DNA of 60,850 nucleotides, the filler included, from Dugesia japonica (lineage: Eukaryota): assembly GCA_001938525.1 (NCBI GenBank). It is 5 parts of 5 records of this genome, joined end to end, with 100 filler letters (N's around TTAATTAATTAA, not from the genome) between each part and the next. Parts side by side here need not be neighbours in the genome. Positions count along the whole stretch, not along the records: positions 23,402 to 31,744 come from MQRL01580808.1; 4 more parts are not named here. One strand, given 5' to 3'. A program made the translations under genes and the position numbers. This document shows positions 23,402 to 32,303 of the stretch, one piece after another. The first letter of the stretch is position 1; every line of letters starts with the position of its first letter. The notes beneath the pieces were generated by a model, which saw only the letters and a program-made list of their open reading frames with translations, was not told where the DNA came from and did not search any database.

Positions 23402-23661
23402 TTTATATATTCACTTTTAATTATAATAAATGAATATATCACAGCATTTCATTATCTAAAATTCCTTGTCTTCTAGATTTAAATATAAAACTATTAATGT
23501 TATTGCCAAAAAATAAAATAGTAGATGATAAACTTTTTTCTCCTCGAAGAAAGTTTTCGGTTGAGTATCAATGTTCAATCATTTCAATTCAAGTTCTTTG
23601 GATAAAATATTTAATTTAATGAAATCAACAGTTTTCATTGGCTCAATGGAATGTAAAAACA

Positions 23662-24299
23662 AGTAGATAAATAGTAGCGCACTGTATCACCCATCCCTGG
23701 TGGCAGTGATATAGATTTTCGATGACACAAAATCCTGCAATCTGGTTGGTCGACACATTTTGGCTGAAAAATAAGTGATACAGTATCCTGAAATATGATC
23801 AACTGACACATTTCAATAGAAAAATTTCGGTGAAATAGTATCATGTAATCTGATTGTCCGTCTCATTTCTTTGTTTAAATTTAAAATTTATTTTTAAAGT
23901 TTTAATTTAGTCTTTAAAATTTTTTTAACTAGCTCCCTTAATTAATGTTAGGAACACTAATAGTAGTAAATTTACTGTGGTGAATTTCAAAACTGCTGTT
24001 TTATTTGCTTGTGGCCTAAACAATATTCGAAACATTTTTATATTTGGGTCATATCAATTGAATTACCGCGTCATTTAAATACTTATTTAACATAACAGCT
24101 AATCGTGTTTTAGGTAGATTTTAATAAATGAATGGCAGCATAATATTGATTTAATGATTTATCCAGTTGAATGTAAGGTACAAGAATATTATAAATGTAA
24201 TTTTTAACCATGTTATTCAAAATGAGCAAAGAATTTCATATCAAATATATGGTTTGATAGTAAGAATCGATTAAGCCAATGCACCACTATCTACCTATT
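23662..24299 (+). mobile_element. Short non-autonomous element bounded by inverted AGTAG-family termini
   Basis: Left AGTAGATAAATAGTAGCGCACTG; right end (reverse complement) AATAGGTAGATAGTGGTGCATTG; internal CCAAT-like repeats. Confidence 0.55.
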
Positions 24300-24322
24300 A
24301 ATATATTTACATTAAAATGCAT

Positions 24323-24550
24323 AGTAGGTAAATAGTGGCGCACGGTTACAACAATACTCTTGAAAAATTGTTTAAAAAATTCTTAAAAAATTTAAGCACA
24401 ATTTAAAAAATTCTAAAAAATTCTTAAAAATTAAAACACAATTTAAAAAATTCTAAAAAATTGTTAAAAAATTAAAACACAATTAAGAAATTTTCTTGAA
24501 AAATCAAACACATTTTTTAACATGTTTTAAAAATTGAAACACATTTAAAA
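24323..24550 (+). mobile_element. AGTAG-family terminus followed by an A-rich tandem array
   Basis: AGTAGGTAAATAGTGGCGCAC followed by repeats of AAAAAATTCTTAAAAA..AAACACAATT. Confidence 0.55.
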
Positions 24551-24626
24551 AGTCAAGCGAATGAGGGAGGTAATCATGTGTGTTCCAGAGTGTTGTGCCC
24601 TTATGTACTTACTTTTTCTCGAAGAA

Positions 24627-24665
24627 GTCAATTCCTGACGAAGACAAAGTCCAAATATAGAATTA
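24627..24665 (+). ncRNA. Degenerate copy of the minimal hammerhead at 30961-31000
   Basis: GTCAATTC-CTGACGA-A-GACAAAGTC-CAAA-TA-TA-GAATT (GAAA>CAAA); flank to about 24702 also matches the 30919-30960 arm. Confidence 0.65.
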
Positions 24666-24739
24666 TTATCAAAAACCAAAAAAAAACAAATTTTGATCGA
24701 AGGTTTTATTTTAATTGAATTCTGATAAACGATCCAACA

Positions 24740-25150
24740 ATTATTCTCCCAATAATTGCAATTGTAAAACAAGAATATTATCTAACGGTTTAGACTTAAT
24801 AATTTCTCTTATCAAGCAGTAGCTGGCCATTTTGCCATAAACACCATTTCACAGTAGTAAAGAACCCGCACCATATTGTTTAATTACAATAAAAACAACT
24901 GATTCACCCAAATATCATCGCTTTTCCTCTGTAAACCATATTTTGAACTTATTTATATGTATGTTTGTCACTTTCTCTCGTTTTACTTTATTTATTTTAT
25001 AGAGCTTCTAGCTGTTTTTTTCTAAAGCAGACATGCTCAAGGAAATAATGACCCTTTTATTCCTTTAGTATTTTCGTTATTATTCTTTGTTTTTGAAAAA
25101 TATTGAGATGCGATCAAATGAACGTCGCATTCTGTTAATGGTTTCATATA
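24740..25150 (-). mobile_element. Tc1-like transposase remnant
   Basis: KFKIWFTEEKR and KQYGAGSLLL*NG..CLIREIIKSKPLDNIL resemble Tc1 KFNLFGSDG and KHGGGSVMVWG..Y..IL. Confidence 0.45.
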
Positions 25151-25479
25151 TTTAGACTTTTAGCAAATAGCTTTTTTAACTTATGAGAGTAGAAATGATG
25201 AATTTTGTTAGAACTTTTATTTGAAAGGGAATACATTTTGAGTGGAAATATTTATAAAATGACATTGTTACAACTTATCTGTCCATGAACAAACGAGTTT
25301 TTCAGGTCAATGTTTTATTAAAAATTATTTTTTTGTTATTTTAGTTCACATACATAGAAAAGTTCCTTCTCATGTTATTGACAAATTTTAAAAAATGTTT
25401 ATATGATTTACTTCAATGGGGCTGCTGTTTTTAACAATTCAACGTGATAACAATATAGCATAAAAAGTATTTATTTATA

Positions 25480-26480
25480 GAAAAAAATCCATATGAATTT
25501 GAAACTTCTTGTTAACGTTTTGATAAAAGAAAAGATACCATCATAAGATAAATTTGAATAGTTGTTTGATTCAAAGAACTTAACAATCGCAGCAATGATC
25601 TCAATGTGATCTTTGTAAATTTGACATAGATAAGAAAATATGGTAATCGAAAGGTGACATGTCTGTGTTATATGGTGGATTTTGTAAAGTTTCCCAATCC
25701 AGATTTTAAAATATTTCTTGAGTCAACTAGGCAACATGAAACTTTGCCTTATTCTGCAAAACAACAATCCCTTTTCAATTAATTCAACTTGGTTATTTTT
25801 AAGCAATGCTGAATGAACTCGGTCTCATTTCTGGCAGTATACATTGAAATTGAATGTCTGGTCGCATTCTAAGCATTTGCCATATATAATTCTACTTGCT
25901 GAATACCAGGCACTTTGCAAAATATTCGGGTAAATTTTAAATTTGGGGAAATACTTCAGAGGTTCAACCATGTTTTATCAAAGAAAACGAATGCTTAGTA
26001 ATAATATATAGAACCGATTTTTTTGTCTACAGTATTTATTCGATCAAGTATATACATATTTTGATTGAGTAAAAACAAAGAATAACAAATATCAACCTAT
26101 TGCTTTTATTTAAAATTACTTAAATCGCGAGGCACAATTTTGTACAATCTTTTGGAAAATCTTAGACTTTACAAATGATTCCAAATGGTTGATAGGGAAC
26201 AGGTAAGGTCTAAAGATTGTTCTTTTATTGTTTGCCTTTGGATTAACTTGAGTTGTCTTAAGTAAGTCATAATCAATATCAGCCAAAAGTTGACCAGAAT
26301 ACAGTTTTTCTTCAAGATTTGAATGTAATTTTCAAAGGATTTGAAATATTTCTTGTGCATTCGTTGGAATGTGCGCCTACCAAACACTTCAATTATTCTT
26401 CGAGTGGTTTCCGTCACGCTACAACCACTCTTGAACTCATATAACAAACAAGCGTGAACTTTGAATTTTGCTAGCGACAT
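25480..26480 (-). mobile_element. Mariner transposase remnant
   Basis: ACLLYEFKSGCSVTETTRRI HTH N-terminus, LDRINTVDKK and WETLQNPPYNTDMSPFDYHIF (YSPDLAPSDY-like). Confidence 0.85.
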
Positions 26481-27588
26481 CTAAAAATAGAATAATTCTA
26501 TAAAACATTAATAAACTATCAATTAAACAATTTATCCTTTAAAATACACAACGCACTTGAAAATGATAAATTCAAACCAAAATTACGATTATTGGTTATA
26601 ATGTTACATTGTTTTAAGGTTGAATTTGTGAAAAACGAGAAAATCTTTTTGAAAAACGTTATACATTTGTTTTCTTGAAATAACATTTATTATTATTATT
26701 ATTAACATTATTAGTGGTTCCCACCAAGAAATTATTTATTTAATTGGTCTTTGGTGTGTTTTGGTTTGAGAAACAATTATTTAGACGAATCACAACAGGG
26801 TTGAACTTTAGATAGAAATACCGGAGATGAGTCTAAATTACGAACCAAGTTAGAATGTCTGCGAACTATAGAAAAAATTAGTAAAGTTGAATCTCTTTGA
26901 TCATTTATAAGTGAATATAACTTCAATAAATAGATAACACAAAGAAATAATTGAAATATTTTAATTTTCATAAACTTTGATTTTTAAAAAAGGTTTAACA
27001 CATTGTTTTAATAAACGTGTATTTTGCAGATAGTTCAAGTACAAAACAAACTATAAAAATTGATAGTAACATAACAAGATATTTTGTTTAATAGGGACAT
27101 TTTCATTTTAATATGACAATAATCAATATTCAATAATCAAATTTTAAATCAATATTAGAATTTTGAAAAATTTTAAAAATAAATTTTAATTAATTAAATT
27201 TTTTATTGAAATAATTATATAACTAATGGCATAGTTTTATTTTAAGTACATAAGTATATATAAAAGTGTATTACCCCGTTTAAAATTTCACCTGAAAATG
27301 ACAGTTATTTGATCGAAAGTTGTTGCCGTTAATAAACATTTCTTATATTATTCTTTTTTACTAATTTCTATAATTAATTAAAATTTGATTATACATTAAG
27401 TATCAAAAAATAGAATGATATGTCAGTTTTGTAAGTTAAATAATATTGTAAAACTATCAATGCGTGAAGTGACACACTTGACAGTTATCATNNNNNNNNN
27501 NNNNNNNNNNNNNNNNNNNNNNNNNNNNNNNNNNNNNNNNNNNNNNNNNNNNNNNNNNNNNNNNNNNNNNNNNNNNNNAAAGTTGAGA

Positions 27589-30500
27589 GAGACATTGACG
27601 GTTTTGTCGAAGCCATGAAGTCCTTATATCAGGATCACATAAATGAGATCCCTCGCAAAGATTTAAAAGGATAAAGAACATCATCAACGAATCGCCGAAA
27701 AGGAAGATATCTATATGACACAAAAACGATAATTATGAAAATTTAATGAAATCCTATATAAATGGAGTTGGAGAGGAAAGTACGTATGAATAATTCACCA
27801 GTAAAAAGAGTATATGAGCGGAATATTCAACCAGTGATGACGGAAGATAGAATACAGACGATGAGGCAAGATATTATTTTATTAGACAGAGTGGGTTTTC
27901 AGAACTTGGCGAGTAGAAACTTTAGTAGGGACAATGTTATTGTTGGTGAGAATATAGACTCATATGTTGCCAATGCCTGTGGAAAAATAATTGTTTAATT
28001 TGCGGAAGTTTGATATTACAGGGTTGGTATTATATACAGAACACTAAACATTTGTGTATTTAGTNGAAATGAAACGATTTAAAAGAAGATACTAACATAA
28101 CAGATCATGATGTATTAAAGGAATAAACCAGAATAACTCCATTGGTTTCATTTTGTCAATAGAGTCAGAATAGAAGAAAGATAAAATAAATCGAAATTAT
28201 GATGAAAAAGTAGAAATGTTTGATAAAGAAGATGAACGAGGGTAAAGTAGAGTAGATAGTAGTGAAGTTAAGTTAGAGATGTTGTGGGATTCAGGAGCTT
28301 TAGTAATAGTCAAACATTAAACTATTGGATAAAAATTGTAAAACAGTTGTTGCCAGTGGGCAGCATCCCATTTAATAGAGCATTTAATAAGGACGTTGAA
28401 AATATGTTGGGTATTGCAGAATTGACTACAAAGTGGAACAAGAAATACAATAAATTAAAGTCATCATAGTTAGACAGATCCACTCAGAATTGACAAGTAA
28501 TATTGATACAATTCATTGTTTTGGAGTGAAATTAACAGAAATAAATTACATTGAAAATAAAATTTTGAAAATTAGACATTTGGATGAAGGTAGAAAAAAC
28601 AACTCGTTGAAGATGTTTTAAGGAATTGATAACCGAAAAGTAGTNCAGAAAATTTCGAATTTTGGTGAGATATTTATGGCTTCGAAATTCAATATTAGAC
28701 ATACGAGGAAGGTAACACGTGAAATAAAAATTAAAAGAGATTCAACAGTACACTATCAAATACATTCCATGCATTCAGAAAAGAAAATTGAATATATGAT
28801 TAAAAAATTAGAAAATATTGGTGTGATAAGCAGGCGTCATTGTCATTTGCTACTAGTCATTGTGTGTAAAAAGAACGGCTTGAATAGAATGTTCACGGAT
28901 TACAGATAAGTGAAGTTAAACACACAAAAACTGTCTATCAAACTGTTAAAAAAAAGTTTATCTGTAACGTAAATATTTTTTTTGATTTATCTGAGACAAG
29001 CTTAATACCAGATATTCAGCTATTATTATATTGTTTATCTGTAACGTAAATATTTTTTTGATTGANNNNNNNNNNNNNNNNNNNNNNNNNNNNNNNNNNN
29101 NNNNNNNNNNNNNNNNNNNNNNNNNNNNNNNNNNNNNNNNNNNNNNNNNNNNNNNNNNATTATTTACATCACCGGTTATTTTTCAAAAGATAATTTGCGA
29201 GTTATTGGATGGATTAATTTTCAAAGATGTGTATGTAAATCTGGAAAATATTCTGGTATATGGAAAAACTTTGGAGGATCACAATAAAATGCTAGCGAAA
29301 GTCTTTTATAGGATCAAGGATTACGAATAAGCCCGGATAAATTTAAGTTTTATCAAGAAGAAGTTGGTATTGTTGAGATATATAGTGGATGTAACTAGTA
29401 TTCATACCAATGAAGTTAGGATTCTGGAGACTAAGAATTCTAAAGTCTCAGAATATTCTTCAAAACTTTATTCGTTTTTCGAAGATAAGAGCTCTTATAT
29501 GTCAAGTAAGATCAGGTTGTATCAAACGATTAAAAGCGTTTAAAGAGATTCATGTCAGAATAGTTTTAATACGTTAAAATTCATTATGTAGTGCTTCAAT
29601 ATTAGAATATCAAAGGGAGGTCAGATGTTCATTTTAGATACCGATGCTAGTTTAAGTGCTATAAGCGCAGTTCTTAGTCAATACATTTGAGGAAAAGAAA
29701 GTAGTAATATACGTATAGATTAAGACATTTGACAGCTCAGGAAAAACAGTACTACGTAATAAGGAAAGGATTATTAGTTTACACGAATTTGTAAAATTCA
29801 AACAACATTTATATGAAAAGAGATTTTAAATTAGAACAAGCCGCAAAGTGTCTGGGTTTTTGAACCACACAGAGAAACCAATCAGTCAACAATTCCATAC
29901 GTGGATAGTGAATTTGGGAGAGTATGATCTTAAAAAATCAAAAAGGTGAAGAACATAACAATGAGAATGAGCTGTATAGGCTAAAGTAGAGTGTATGTTC
30001 CCAGTTCAGCACGAAACACATAGACGCATACATAAACATACCAATGGAGTTCAACATGTGACCGAAATAATTACAATGATTTGACAAGAAGCCAACATTT
30101 TTAGAATAAACTATACTGAATTTACCCCAAATAGAACAGAGGAAGTTGGGAAACAAATATATGGCGGTAATTATTGATCGTTTTAGTAAACTAGTCAGCT
30201 TATCTGCAGTTTTAATAAATAGATAAAGTCAAAATTTTATGGTAAATTTAAACAAATGGATATAACGTTTTGGGAAACAAAAGAACATTCTGACAGAGAG
30301 ATGAAAAGTGTTTGAAAGTCATGTGATGGGAAAGAAACTAGGAAAATTCGGAATTGTGCGGGAATTTAGTTCCCTGTATCAACATAAATCGAATGGTTTG
30401 GTGTAACGAATGATTCAAAAAGTAAAGAACAGTAACACAATTTCAGTAAAAGGAAATTTAGTGAAAAAGATTGGGAGGTATTATTAACGAGGTTGAAATT

Positions 30501-30900
30501 TAGTATTAATGCTACAATGTAAGAGTCAACAAAATTCTATCTTTTTGATATCGTGTTAGGTCAGAAAATAAATCTTCATACGAAAGAAGAAACNATCTAA
30601 GGTGGAAAGACAGACAAAGAAAAAATGTTGTAACAGAATTTGGAGAAAGAGACCCAGAAAATGGAGAATTCCAAGAAAAGGAAATCAGTTTAAAGATTAT
30701 TTAAGGAGAGATACATTATTAGTCTGAGTAGAACCACACAGACAAAAGAAGAGCGAATTGTTTTTACGAGCACATTAAGTAAAAATAAAGTTTTCAAATG
30801 AGTTGAAAACCAGGAGATTAGAATGGCTAAAAGATGGAAAGCATTATAAAGTAGGAGAGATTTAAAGAAATTTAAAATAATATTTTTCAATGAAATGAAA
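27589..30900 (+). mobile_element. Ty3/Gypsy LTR retrotransposon internal region, decayed
   Basis: Protease MLWDSGA (~28280); RT VCKKNG..RMFTDYR and SPVIFQ..VYVNLENILVYG; RNase H FILDTDAS..AVLSQ; integrase IIDRFSK and YQHKSNGLV, in Gypsy order. Confidence 0.9.
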
Positions 30901-30918
30901 TAATTCATTTAATCTAAA

Positions 30919-31074
30919 AGCTTTGATCAAAGTTTTGGTTTTTTTTATTGATATTAAATAACAATTCGATATTTCGACCTTGTCTTCGTCAGGAATTGAC
31001 TTTTTTGAAGACAAGGTCGAAATATCGAATTTTTATCCAATATCAATAAAAAAACCAAAATTTTGATCAAAGCT
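30919..31074. repeat. 156-bp near-perfect palindrome (arms 30919-30987 and 31007-31074)
   Basis: AGCTTTGATCAAA..TTCGATATTTCGACCTTGTCTTC / GAAGACAAGGTCGAAATATCGAA..TTTGATCAAAGCT. Confidence 0.95.
30961..31000 (-). ncRNA. Minimal type I hammerhead ribozyme with intact core
   Basis: Minus strand GTCAATTC-CTGACGA-A-GAC(AAG)GTC-GAAA-TA-TC-GAATTG: CUGANGA/GAAA/UH core, 6-bp stem I (CAAUUC/GAAUUG), 3-bp stem II, GAAA-YR-UH minimal stem III. Confidence 0.8.
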
Positions 31075-31415
31075 NNNNNNNNNNNNNNNNNNNNNNNNNN
31101 NNNNNNNNNNTATGTCCAACATTTATTCTCGCAATACTTGGAATTGTAAAATGAAATAATGTTCAAATTTTTAATTAATAAATATTCGAAGTATTTAGTT
31201 ATTGTTCAATTGTGATAGATGACAATATTATAGTAACTACAAATAAATTAAAAATTATTCAAATAATAAGAAAACAAATTGAAATATTATGACAATCTAC
31301 TTTAACAGTTTTTTAAAATATGTTCCATTTTAGAATTACTAAAAAATAAATTCATCAAATAAAGTATGGCAATAGCAAAAGCATAATTAATATCAAAGCA
31401 ATTCATGTTTTCAAT

Positions 31416-31727
31416 TTATGGTTTCAGAACATTAGCAGTAAATTTATCTTTAACATTGCCCGATGGATGATAAAAGCAAACAATATATGATTTCCCTGAT
31501 CTATGTTGACCTATTCCGATTCCTATTTTCTTTGAATCTTTCCAAACTAATTGAGTAAAATGTCCTTAAAAATTTAAGTTTTAATAATATATCAATTTTA
31601 TCATTTTCTTTTTATTGTGCTAAAATTAAATTAATTTACTAACCGACTTGTTTGAAAGAATTGCCTGGCTCATTTCGATAATTATAATTTTTACCTTCAT
31701 TATACCAACTTTTCACCAGAGCAATAC
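31416..31727 (-). CDS. CAP/SCP (GAPR-1/PR-1-like) protein, C-terminal two exons (31727-31644, 31564-31416); 5' part in gap
   Basis: VKSWYNEGKNYNY..VG|HFTQLVWKDSKKIGIGI..YIVCFYHPSGNV..F.ANV CAP signature motifs; GT-AG intron. Confidence 0.9.
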
Positions 31728-32303
31728 CTGAATAAGAAAAAATANNNNNNNNNNNNNNNNNNNNNNNNNNNNNNNNNNNNNNNNNNNNTTAATTAATTAA
31801 NNNNNNNNNNNNNNNNNNNNNNNNNNNNNNNNNNNNNNNNNNNNACAATGTATTAACCAATGGGAATTAAATTAAATTTCACTATTTAAAGAATTCATAA
31901 AAAGGATATTGAAAAAATTAATTAAAATTTTAAATGTTATCCTAAAAATTAACATTAAATTAATTTTAATATATTACCAATAAAATGCTATTTGTTGAAT
32001 TTTCTTATTTCTAATTCTTTAATTCTATTAATAAACGACTTAACNNNNNNNNNNNNNNNNNNNNNCCAATTCGATTGGGTTAAATATATAGTTATCATAA
32101 ACACTGAAAATTATATTATTTACTAACAAATTAAACATATGAAACAAATACTTTAACAGAAATTCTAACATTATTCTAAATTATTTTTAAAAATATAGTT
32201 ATATATCAAATGGTAAAATGAACTGTAAAAAGTTCTAAATTCTATTATTTCATTAATTAAATTTACATAATTTTAAATTAAATATTTTACAATAAAAATT
32301 AAC

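What the first reader, a model, noticed from the sequence alone, without database searches (positions are those of the whole stretch)
30919..31074. Intact minimal hammerhead ribozyme inside a 156-bp palindrome, downstream of a CAP gene
Seen: the minus strand at 30961-31000 has every hammerhead core element (CUGACGA, GAAA, UC cleavage site), a 6-bp stem I and a 3-bp stem II. An inverted partial copy lacking CUGAC forms the other palindrome arm. Known: Penelope-like element terminal repeats carry minimal GAAA-YR-UH hammerheads that are thought to cleave as dimers, and are often partly inverted. Inference: this is a solo inverted Penelope terminal repeat. It lies about 415 nt 3' of the CAP gene stop on the same strand, just past an AATAAA (31122-31127), so read-through RNA could self-cleave, be sequestered by the antisense arm, or feed hairpin small RNAs.
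Basis: partly seen in the sequence, partly recalled or inferred. Interest (0 to 1): 0.8.

Follow-up and report, generated by a model that had tools for sequence, protein, structure and literature searches.

The report
Penelope-type minimal hammerhead in a repeat
The hammerhead ribozyme motif is real and belongs to the known Penelope-type minimal class, but it lies in one decaying head-to-head insertion of a very abundant short retroelement, beyond the end of the CAP messenger RNA, so it is ordinary for an invertebrate genome.

Summary
The minus strand at 30998-30962 carries a complete minimal type I hammerhead: a 6-bp helix I, CUGACGA, a 3-bp helix II, GAAA and a UC cleavage site. It also has the three further hallmarks published for Penelope-like-element (PLE) minimal hammerheads. 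No Rfam hammerhead model reaches threshold.

It lies in a 156-bp palindrome whose other arm lacks CUGAC. The palindrome is not a unit. It is one insertion (about 30905-31148) of a ~151-nt repeat. An inverted copy holds the whole ribozyme. It abuts a direct copy that is 5'-truncated and 48 nt longer at its outer end. An exact 12-bp target-site duplication flanks both. A single-arm, decayed copy (G12 to C) lies at 24619-24769.

Read data show thousands of copies genome-wide, with the ribozyme module the most abundant part. This architecture matches published PLE insertion signatures.

The proposed link to the CAP gene is not supported. CAP-like mRNA ends about 50-95 nt past the stop. Read-through is about 1% or less. 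The AATAAA lies inside the repeat. In palindrome RNA the ribozyme fold is fully outcompeted. No read ends pile up at the cleavage site. This is a new member of a known kind, of low to moderate interest.

The parts
30893..30904 (+). Left target-site duplication, AAATGAAATAAT.
   Evidence: The exact 12-mer occurs only twice in the window, at the two element borders. Expected by chance 0.03.
30905..31006 (-). Inverted copy of the repeat, unit positions 1 to about 104. It holds the complete hammerhead and lacks the last ~48 nt of the unit.
   Evidence: blastn 30902-31008 against 24721-24619, 81% over 107 nt. Alignment A2. The family boundary lies at 31005/31006, shown by variable loose ends (table 7).
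30962..30998 (-). Minimal type I hammerhead motif. Predicted cleavage is between 30968 (C17) and 30967.
   Evidence: Direct reading. Only full-descriptor hit in the piece, 0 of 20,000 simulations. It is the most abundant bin of the family, and the only variant listed at 10% or more is the helix II loop base 30979.
30919..30987 (.). Left palindrome arm. The loop is 30988-31006.
31007..31074 (.). Right palindrome arm. It is the start of the direct copy and lacks helix I 5' strand and CUGAC.
31007..31148 (+). Direct copy, 5'-truncated, unit positions 22-151. It is interrupted by the 36-N gap at 31075-31110, which was left unfilled.
   Evidence: blastn 31007-31072 against 24640-24702 (83%) and 31115-31151 against 24733-24769 (89%). 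The family ends at about 31151 (table 7).
31111..31148 (+). Visible part of the ~48-nt extension ('tail') present on the direct copy only. It contains the AATAAA (minus strand, 31127-31122).
   Evidence: 31122 T>A in about 98% of family depth (table 3).
31149..31160 (+). Right target-site duplication, AAATGAAATAAT.
24619..24769 (+). Second copy of the repeat, with a single arm (~151 nt). It is decayed: G12 to C, C17 to A, helix II loop G to A, and the last helix I pair lost.
31416..31563 (-). Context only: last exon of the CAP gene, stop codon at 31418-31416. The intron is 31564-31642.
   Evidence: Pfam PF00188, 25.2 bits against a cut-off of 21.1. Translation. Splice joint 31563>31643 in 433+22 reads, and molecule ends at 31369 and 31322.

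Best explanation
The feature is one insertion (about 30905-31148, flanked by a 12-bp target-site duplication) of a very abundant, ORF-less, ~151-nt retroelement. The element's first ~45 nt are a Penelope-type minimal type I hammerhead ribozyme. It inserted head to head. The left copy is inverted, begins at the unit's 5' end and so holds the whole ribozyme. The right copy is direct, starts at unit position 22 (so it lacks helix I 5' strand and CUGAC) and runs 48 nt further at its outer end. Shown: motif anatomy, copy relationships, the duplication, high copy number, and transcription of family members from both strands. Inferred: the element is mobilised by a PLE reverse transcriptase/endonuclease, which in vitro cleaves and extends both target strands from two start sites; this would explain both the inverted pair and the one-sided tail. 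Also inferred: in active source copies the ribozyme works as described for PLE minimal hammerheads, weakly and as a dimer through the palindromic AUAU. At this locus it is most likely inert. There is only one complete motif, and the antisense arm traps it in a hairpin of -87.5 kcal/mol. It lies beyond the CAP poly(A) sites.
For: All core nucleotides are present, with a 6-bp helix I and a 3-bp helix II. [quoted passage not shown] The full descriptor was found in 0 of 20,000 simulations. Family level: 8,836 and 10,604 contigs at 90% likeness or more were laid in two DNA runs. Summed word depth in 30962-31003 is 0.9-1.6 million, against about 12-15 in single-copy bins. The ribozyme bin is 2-8 times deeper than either flank. 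The only variant listed at 10% or more inside the motif is the helix II loop base (30979). An RNA loose end shows a CUGAUGA variant, which changes only the free position N7. Architecture: copy relationships; the 12-mer only at the two borders; many other loci join the left arm to the right arm at varied points (table 5). Published PLE signatures match: an adjacent inverted 5'-truncated copy, a 30-40-bp tail at one end, and assemblies that break there (PMC8557442); cleavage and extension of both strands and two RT start sites (PMC11167929); dual minimal hammerheads on opposite strands. Inertness here: the helix I pair probability is 0 in palindrome RNA, and the ribozyme fold is -5.3 against an MFE of -9.2 kcal/mol for the isolated 46-mer.
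Against: No Rfam hammerhead model reaches its threshold. Helix II has 3 bp with a 3-nt loop, much shorter than the 6-8 bp described for PLE minimal hammerheads. No PLE RT/GIY-YIG ORF is in the piece; the only RT remnant looks LTR-type and scores weakly. The unit has a fixed 5' end rather than the graded 5' truncation typical of PLEs, and the inverted copy is the one that is 5'-complete. No covariation test was possible, because only three copies are readable as sequence. No read ends were flagged at the cleavage site (table 6). No contig spans the palindrome centre at this locus.
Confidence: 0.75

Rival explanations
1. The hammerhead resemblance is a coincidence. The conserved ~42-nt module serves another purpose in the repeat, such as a promoter, an RT recognition site or a protein-binding site, and never cleaves.
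For: No Rfam hammerhead hit at threshold. Helix II is very short. The isolated RNA prefers another fold. No read ends at the cleavage site. PLE minimal hammerheads cleave poorly even in vitro.
Against: Seven independent descriptor features coincide, including three that are specific to PLE minimal hammerheads. The descriptor was found in 0 of 20,000 simulations. The two variants seen (helix II loop, N7) both fall at positions the ribozyme tolerates. The insertion architecture is also PLE-like.
Confidence: 0.12
2. The palindrome is a DNA transposon of the MITE or foldback type, with terminal inverted repeats, and the hammerhead-like string is incidental.
For: A near-perfect 156-bp palindrome, a flanking direct repeat and AT-rich sequence.
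Against: Copy 2 is a single arm with no inverted partner. Homology continues 48 nt beyond the palindrome on one side only. Other loci join the arms at many different points (table 5). The family's sharpest boundary is at the palindrome centre, not at its ends (table 7).
Confidence: 0.05
3. The inverted arrangement at this locus is an assembly artefact next to a gap: two unrelated copies of a high-copy repeat were wrongly joined.
For: It abuts a 36-N gap. No contig spans the centre. Contigs of both DNA runs stop about 31 nt into the repeat (table 8). PLE structures are known to confuse short-read assemblies.
Against: The exact 12-bp duplication sits at both outer borders, which a chance misjoin would not produce. 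Both outer junctions are in contigs of two studies. Head-to-head pairs occur at other loci and in RNA reads (tables 5 and 7).
Confidence: 0.06
4. The element has been taken over by the CAP gene. It processes read-through transcripts by self-cleavage, or it yields hairpin small RNAs that regulate the gene.
For: It is on the same strand as CAP, 416 nt past the stop. A long hairpin is a plausible Dicer substrate.
Against: Molecule ends lie at 31369 and 31322, and depth is 2-7 at 31172-31297 against about 500 in the exon. The ribozyme fold is excluded when the upstream arm is transcribed. The locus is one of thousands of copies. Caveat: the RNA reads on CAP are only 90-99% alike, so they come from a divergent strain or a paralogue.
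Confidence: 0.03

Closest known systems
Minimal hammerhead ribozymes of Penelope-like elements (Cervera and de la Pena 2014, PMC4209133; Lunse et al. 2017, known here only as cited in PMC6765202)
   Same: Type I topology. CUGANGA and GAAA boxes. No real helix III, only A15.1-U16.1 around a palindromic dinucleotide. [quoted passage not shown] The G10.1-C11.1 pair. Thousands of mostly solitary copies per genome. Pairs on opposite strands.
   Different: Helix II is 3 bp with a 3-nt loop, against the 6-8 bp reported. Helix I is 6 contiguous bp, against 4-5. The motif sits at the very 5' end of a ~151-nt ORF-less unit rather than in a pLTR next to an RT/EN ORF.
PLE insertion architecture (Craig et al. 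2021, PMC8557442; PMC11167929)
   Same: An inverted copy directly abuts a direct copy. One end has an extra short tail. There is no poly(A). There is a target-site duplication. The short-read assembly breaks at the element.
   Different: The tail is 48 nt, against 30-40. Here the inverted copy is 5'-complete and the direct copy is the truncated one. The element is only ~151 nt long.
Non-LTR retrozymes of animals (PMC7229834; bioRxiv 10.64898/2026.07.22.740005)
   Same: Short, AT-rich, ORF-less elements with a type I hammerhead that are thought to derive from PLEs.
   Different: Retrozymes are tandem arrays of 150-450-bp units with canonical hammerheads (loop 1-loop 2 contacts). Here the copies are dispersed or inverted, no tandem array is in the piece, and the ribozyme is of the minimal kind.
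Schistosome Sm-alpha / Sj-alpha SINE-like hammerhead elements (as summarised in PMC6765202)
   Same: A very high-copy short interspersed element carrying a hammerhead.
   Different: Sm-alpha has a promoter upstream of a canonical hammerhead with a longer helix II. Here only about 6 nt precede helix I, and the motif is minimal.

Membership tests
Hammerhead ribozyme, PLE-type minimal type I | Conserved core: C3-U4-G5-A6-N7-G8-A9, G12-A13-A14, A15.1-U16.1, H17 | tested here: met
   CUGACGA at 30992-30986, GAAA at 30975-30972, U at 30969, C at 30968. Descriptor hit.
Hammerhead ribozyme, PLE-type minimal type I | Helix I formed by the sequences flanking the core (4-6 bp) | tested here: met
   CAAUUC / GAAUUG, 6 Watson-Crick pairs.
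Hammerhead ribozyme, PLE-type minimal type I | Helix II closed by G10.1-C11.1, usually 6-8 bp in PLEs | tested here: inconclusive
   G10.1-C11.1 is present, but the helix has only 3 bp with a 3-nt loop. The loop base varies G/A in the family.
Hammerhead ribozyme, PLE-type minimal type I | [quoted passage not shown] | tested here: met
   A at 30985. The hallmark is described in PMC4209133.
Hammerhead ribozyme, PLE-type minimal type I | Palindromic 15.2-16.2 / loop III that allows a dimer | tested here: met
   A-UA-U at 30972-30969 is self-complementary.
Hammerhead ribozyme, PLE-type minimal type I | Match to a curated covariance model | tested here: not met
   No Hammerhead_1, _3, HH9, HH10 or _II hit at E of 10 or less. 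RAGATH-1 hammerhead scores 16.2 bits against 56.3. I did not check whether these models were built to include the minimal PLE form.
Hammerhead ribozyme, PLE-type minimal type I | Compensatory changes in the helices across family members | not testable with these tools
Only three copies are readable as sequence.
Hammerhead ribozyme, PLE-type minimal type I | Self-cleavage after H17 | tested here: inconclusive
   No pile of read ends at 30968|30967 in two RNA runs (table 6). Such ends were also absent for a PLE hammerhead that does cleave in vitro. A bench assay is needed.
Penelope-like element (autonomous) | ORF with a telomerase-like RT and a GIY-YIG endonuclease between pLTRs | tested here: not met
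   No such ORF next to either copy. The only RT remnant (29157-29330) gives RVT_1 at 13.9 bits, below the cut-off, and looks LTR-type.
PLE-type insertion (autonomous or mobilised in trans) | Adjacent inverted copy, a one-sided tail, a TSD, no poly(A) | tested here: met
   compared with PMC8557442 and PMC11167929.
Non-LTR retrozyme | Head-to-tail tandem units, each with a type I hammerhead | tested here: not met
   No tandem repeat of the unit in 23402-31744. The 3' flanks of family copies are variable (table 7).
MITE / foldback DNA transposon | Symmetric terminal inverted repeats in all copies | tested here: not met
   Copy 2 has one arm only. Homology is asymmetric beyond the palindrome.

The most novel reading that the evidence does not exclude
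The ~42-nt ribozyme module (30964-31005) is the most abundant part of the family. It is shared by at least two subfamilies with different downstream sequences, and it sits at a fixed 5' end. This could mean a distinct class of dispersed, ~150-nt, 'hammerhead-first' elements that parasitise PLEs. In such elements an ultra-short hammerhead (3-bp helix II) would itself be the selected unit, for example as the RT/EN recognition or 5'-end-defining element, rather than a passenger of truncated PLEs.
Probability: 0.2. Interest if true: 0.5.

Novelty: new member of a known kind. Interest (0 to 1): 0.27.

Why it matters
The finding adds one more very high-copy family to the known spread of minimal hammerheads in animal genomes. 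It also gives a cleanly resolved example of a single PLE-type head-to-head insertion, with both borders, the target-site duplication and the one-sided tail in view, which fits the recent in vitro result that PLE proteins prime on both strands. It does not reveal a new ribozyme class or a regulatory device for the CAP gene. For annotation, such palindromes next to assembly gaps should be read as retroelement insertions, not as gene-linked RNA switches.

Tried and rejected
- **Rfam scans.** I scanned the whole piece and an 81-nt window. No hammerhead family reached threshold. The RAGATH-1 alignment proposes a long helix III (30971-30950), but its helix I does not pair and copy 2 lacks that hairpin, so I rejected it.
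- **Pattern scans of public collections.** The metagenome, viral and prokaryote-genome collections gave one hit (L001, a lake metagenome) whose flanks are unrelated and which has no helix I. It is a chance match. The other two collections gave nothing. No covariation alignment could therefore be built.
- **Literature.** Searching the full text of papers for the motif strings found only unrelated primers and siRNAs. The supplements of PMC4209133 are not held, and PMC5785218 is not held.
- **Apparent A-to-G RNA/DNA differences** in the left arm (30947, 30954) looked like hairpin editing. The same letters exist in one to a few DNA contigs at single-copy depth, so they more likely mark particular expressed copies (table 3).
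- **A hidden inverted arm upstream of copy 2** was considered. None was found.
- **Species.** I did not try to identify the species. The large protein searches were not needed for the claim.
- **The gap.** The N gap was left unfilled, although the read tool printed loose ends beside it.

Full report
**1. Observation**

Read on the minus strand, 30998-30962 is a complete minimal type I hammerhead:
- Helix I 5' strand CAAUUC, 30998-30993.
- CUGACGA, 30992-30986.
- One extra A, 30985.
- Helix II GAC/GUC, 30984-30982 and 30978-30976, closed by the loop AAG, 30981-30979.
- GAAA, 30975-30972.
- UA, 30971-30970.
- U16.1 at 30969 and C17 at 30968.
- Helix I 3' strand GAAUUG, 30967-30962.

The predicted cleavage is between 30968 and 30967.

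The 156-bp palindrome is real as assembled. The arms are 91-96% complementary and the loop is 19 nt. The RNA fold is -87.5 kcal/mol, z = -18. The right arm begins at GAAGAC and lacks helix I 5' strand and CUGAC.

The bare core pattern is not significant: 0.66 are expected per window. A full descriptor with the helices and the palindromic loop III occurred in none of 20,000 simulated 8.3-kb pieces and once in the real piece.

No Rfam hammerhead family is matched at E of 10 or less over the piece. In an 81-nt scan the only hit is RAGATH-1 hammerhead at 16.2 bits, against a gathering score of 56.3, and the helix I it proposes does not pair.

**2. What the palindrome is**

A second copy lies 6 kb away at 24619-24769 on the plus strand. 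It has a single arm and is about 81-89% identical. It defines a unit of about 151 nt that starts about 6 nt before helix I.

Against this unit:
- The left half of the finding (31008 down to 30902, minus strand) is unit positions 1 to about 104.
- The right half (31007-31072, then the 36-N gap at 31075-31110, then 31115-31151, plus strand) is unit positions 22-151.

So the palindrome is the overlap of two copies placed head to head. The direct copy runs 48 nt further at its outer end.

The 12-mer AAATGAAATAAT stands at 30893-30904 and 31149-31160, exactly at the two outer borders, and nowhere else in the window (expected 0.03). This is one insertion event with a target-site duplication.

Copy 2 is a decayed ribozyme: G12 to C, C17 to A, helix II loop G to A, and the last helix I pair lost. 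There is no tandem arrangement in the piece and no inverted partner for copy 2.

**3. Family-level evidence from public reads**

In two DNA runs from different studies, 8,836 and 10,604 contigs were laid at 90% likeness or more. Nearly all of them lie in 30878-31171.

Summed word depth is 0.9-1.6 million in 30962-31003, against about 12-15 in the neighbouring single-copy bins. The tool warns that this is not a copy number. I read it only as thousands to tens of thousands of copies.

The ribozyme bin is 2-8 times deeper than either flank.

Loose ends mark two boundaries:
- At 31005/31006 the sequences beyond are variable and AT-rich (agreement about 0.45). This is an element terminus.
- At 30963/30964 the sequence beyond is conserved but different (agreement 0.73-0.84). 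This is a second subfamily that shares only the ribozyme module.

Within the motif, the only variant listed at 10% or more of depth is 30979, the helix II loop base. A loose end in RNA reads shows CUGAUGA instead of CUGACGA, which changes only the free position N7, in another head-to-head pair. Many other loci join the left arm to the right arm at differing points (table 5), so inverted pairs recur in the family.

At this locus, contigs of both studies cover the left junction (30500-30935 and 30500-30931) and the right junction (31111-31204). None spans the centre, so the centre rests on the assembly plus the target-site duplication.

**4. Comparison with the literature**

Cervera and de la Pena 2014 (PMC4209133) describe PLE minimal hammerheads as follows:
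- Type I motifs without a real helix III.
- Thousands per genome, mostly solitary, and sometimes paired on opposite strands.
- Inactive as single motifs and weakly active as dimers.

The present motif meets each of these structural points. It differs in its very short helix II (3 bp against 6-8).

Craig et al. 2021 (PMC8557442) describe PLE insertions with an adjacent inverted 5'-truncated copy, a 30-40-bp tail at one end only, and frequent short-read assembly problems.

PMC11167929 shows that a PLE protein cleaves and extends both target strands and starts reverse transcription at two nearby internal sites, which accounts for the tail. It also reports that no RNA-seq reads end at the hammerhead site, and that cleavage is not needed for insertion in vitro.

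The inverted pair, the 48-nt one-sided extension, the duplication and the lack of poly(A) here fit this picture.

No RT/GIY-YIG ORF is near either copy. The RT remnant at about 28676-29330 is weak (RVT_1, 13.9 bits) and looks LTR-type. I therefore read the element as non-autonomous, or as an extreme 3' fragment, mobilised in trans. That step is inference.

**5. Mechanism at this locus**

The isolated 46-mer prefers another fold: -9.2 kcal/mol against -5.3 for the hammerhead fold.

In RNA that includes the other arm, which is made first on the minus strand, the probability of every helix I pair is 0.

Only one complete motif is present, so a dimer cannot form in cis.

No pile of read ends lies at 30968|30967 (table 6). 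I conclude that the motif is most likely inert here.

Family RNA is seen from both strands, with the ribozyme-sense strand 1.3-2 times more frequent (table 2). Per copy the level is very low, which is compatible with passive co-transcription. One library was oligo-dT, which would miss circles.

**6. The CAP gene**

The last exon (31563-31416, minus strand) matches Pfam CAP at 25.2 bits, above the cut-off of 21.1.

RNA reads show:
- The 79-nt intron at 31564-31642.
- Molecule ends at 31369 and 31322.
- Depth falling from about 500 to 2-7 by 31172-31297.

The AATAAA at 31127-31122 lies inside the repeat's tail. About 98% of family depth has another base at 31122.

Caveat: the RNA reads on the exon are 90-99% alike, with many fixed differences from the window that the DNA runs do not share. 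They come from a divergent strain or a paralogue, so the poly(A) positions are transferred by homology.

**7. Verdict**

This is a genuine Penelope-type minimal hammerhead motif in one head-to-head insertion of a very abundant short retroelement. The kind is already described as massive and widespread in metazoans. The family itself and its very short helix II may be undescribed. There is no support for a role in CAP expression. The gap was left unfilled.

Noticed in passing
window 26169-26480 (-): Remnant of a mariner/Mos1-type transposase N-terminus (Pfam HTH_48, 32 bits, E 1.3e-07) in a short ORF. The rest of the transposase was not looked for.
   Followed up: partly
window 27400-30600 (+): A stretch with strong positive GC skew and broken ORFs that resemble the RT of an LTR-type retrotransposon (RVT_1 at only 13.9 bits at 29157-29330). 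It is interrupted by N runs. It is degenerate and low-copy, apart from short islands at 30500-30541 and 30710-30751 whose summed depths are in the thousands.
   Followed up: partly
window 24275-24346: A near-perfect hairpin that gives weak hits to a microRNA precursor model on both strands (mir-3927, 21-24 bits, far below threshold). It is probably another small inverted-repeat element.
   Followed up: no
window 24373-24492: A 40-bp AT-rich tandem repeat, 3 copies, 91% matches, about 130 bp upstream of the second copy of the hammerhead element.
   Followed up: no
window 31400-31744: All RNA reads of run X22 on the CAP exons differ from the window at many fixed positions (for example 31416, 31444, 31488, 31506, 31538), while both DNA runs agree with the window. 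The expressed gene is a divergent allele or a close CAP paralogue.
   Followed up: partly
window 30947 and 30954: RNA reads carry G and A where almost all DNA copies carry A and T. The same letters exist in one to a few DNA contigs at single-copy depth, so a few particular copies of the repeat seem to supply most of the RNA. Editing of the hairpin is not excluded.
   Followed up: partly
window 30963/30964, loose ends: A large subfamily shares the ribozyme module but continues after the cleavage site with a different, conserved sequence (CAAUCUC followed by an A-rich run). Together with a GAG seen upstream in some RNA reads, this could form a helix I with an internal loop.
   Followed up: no
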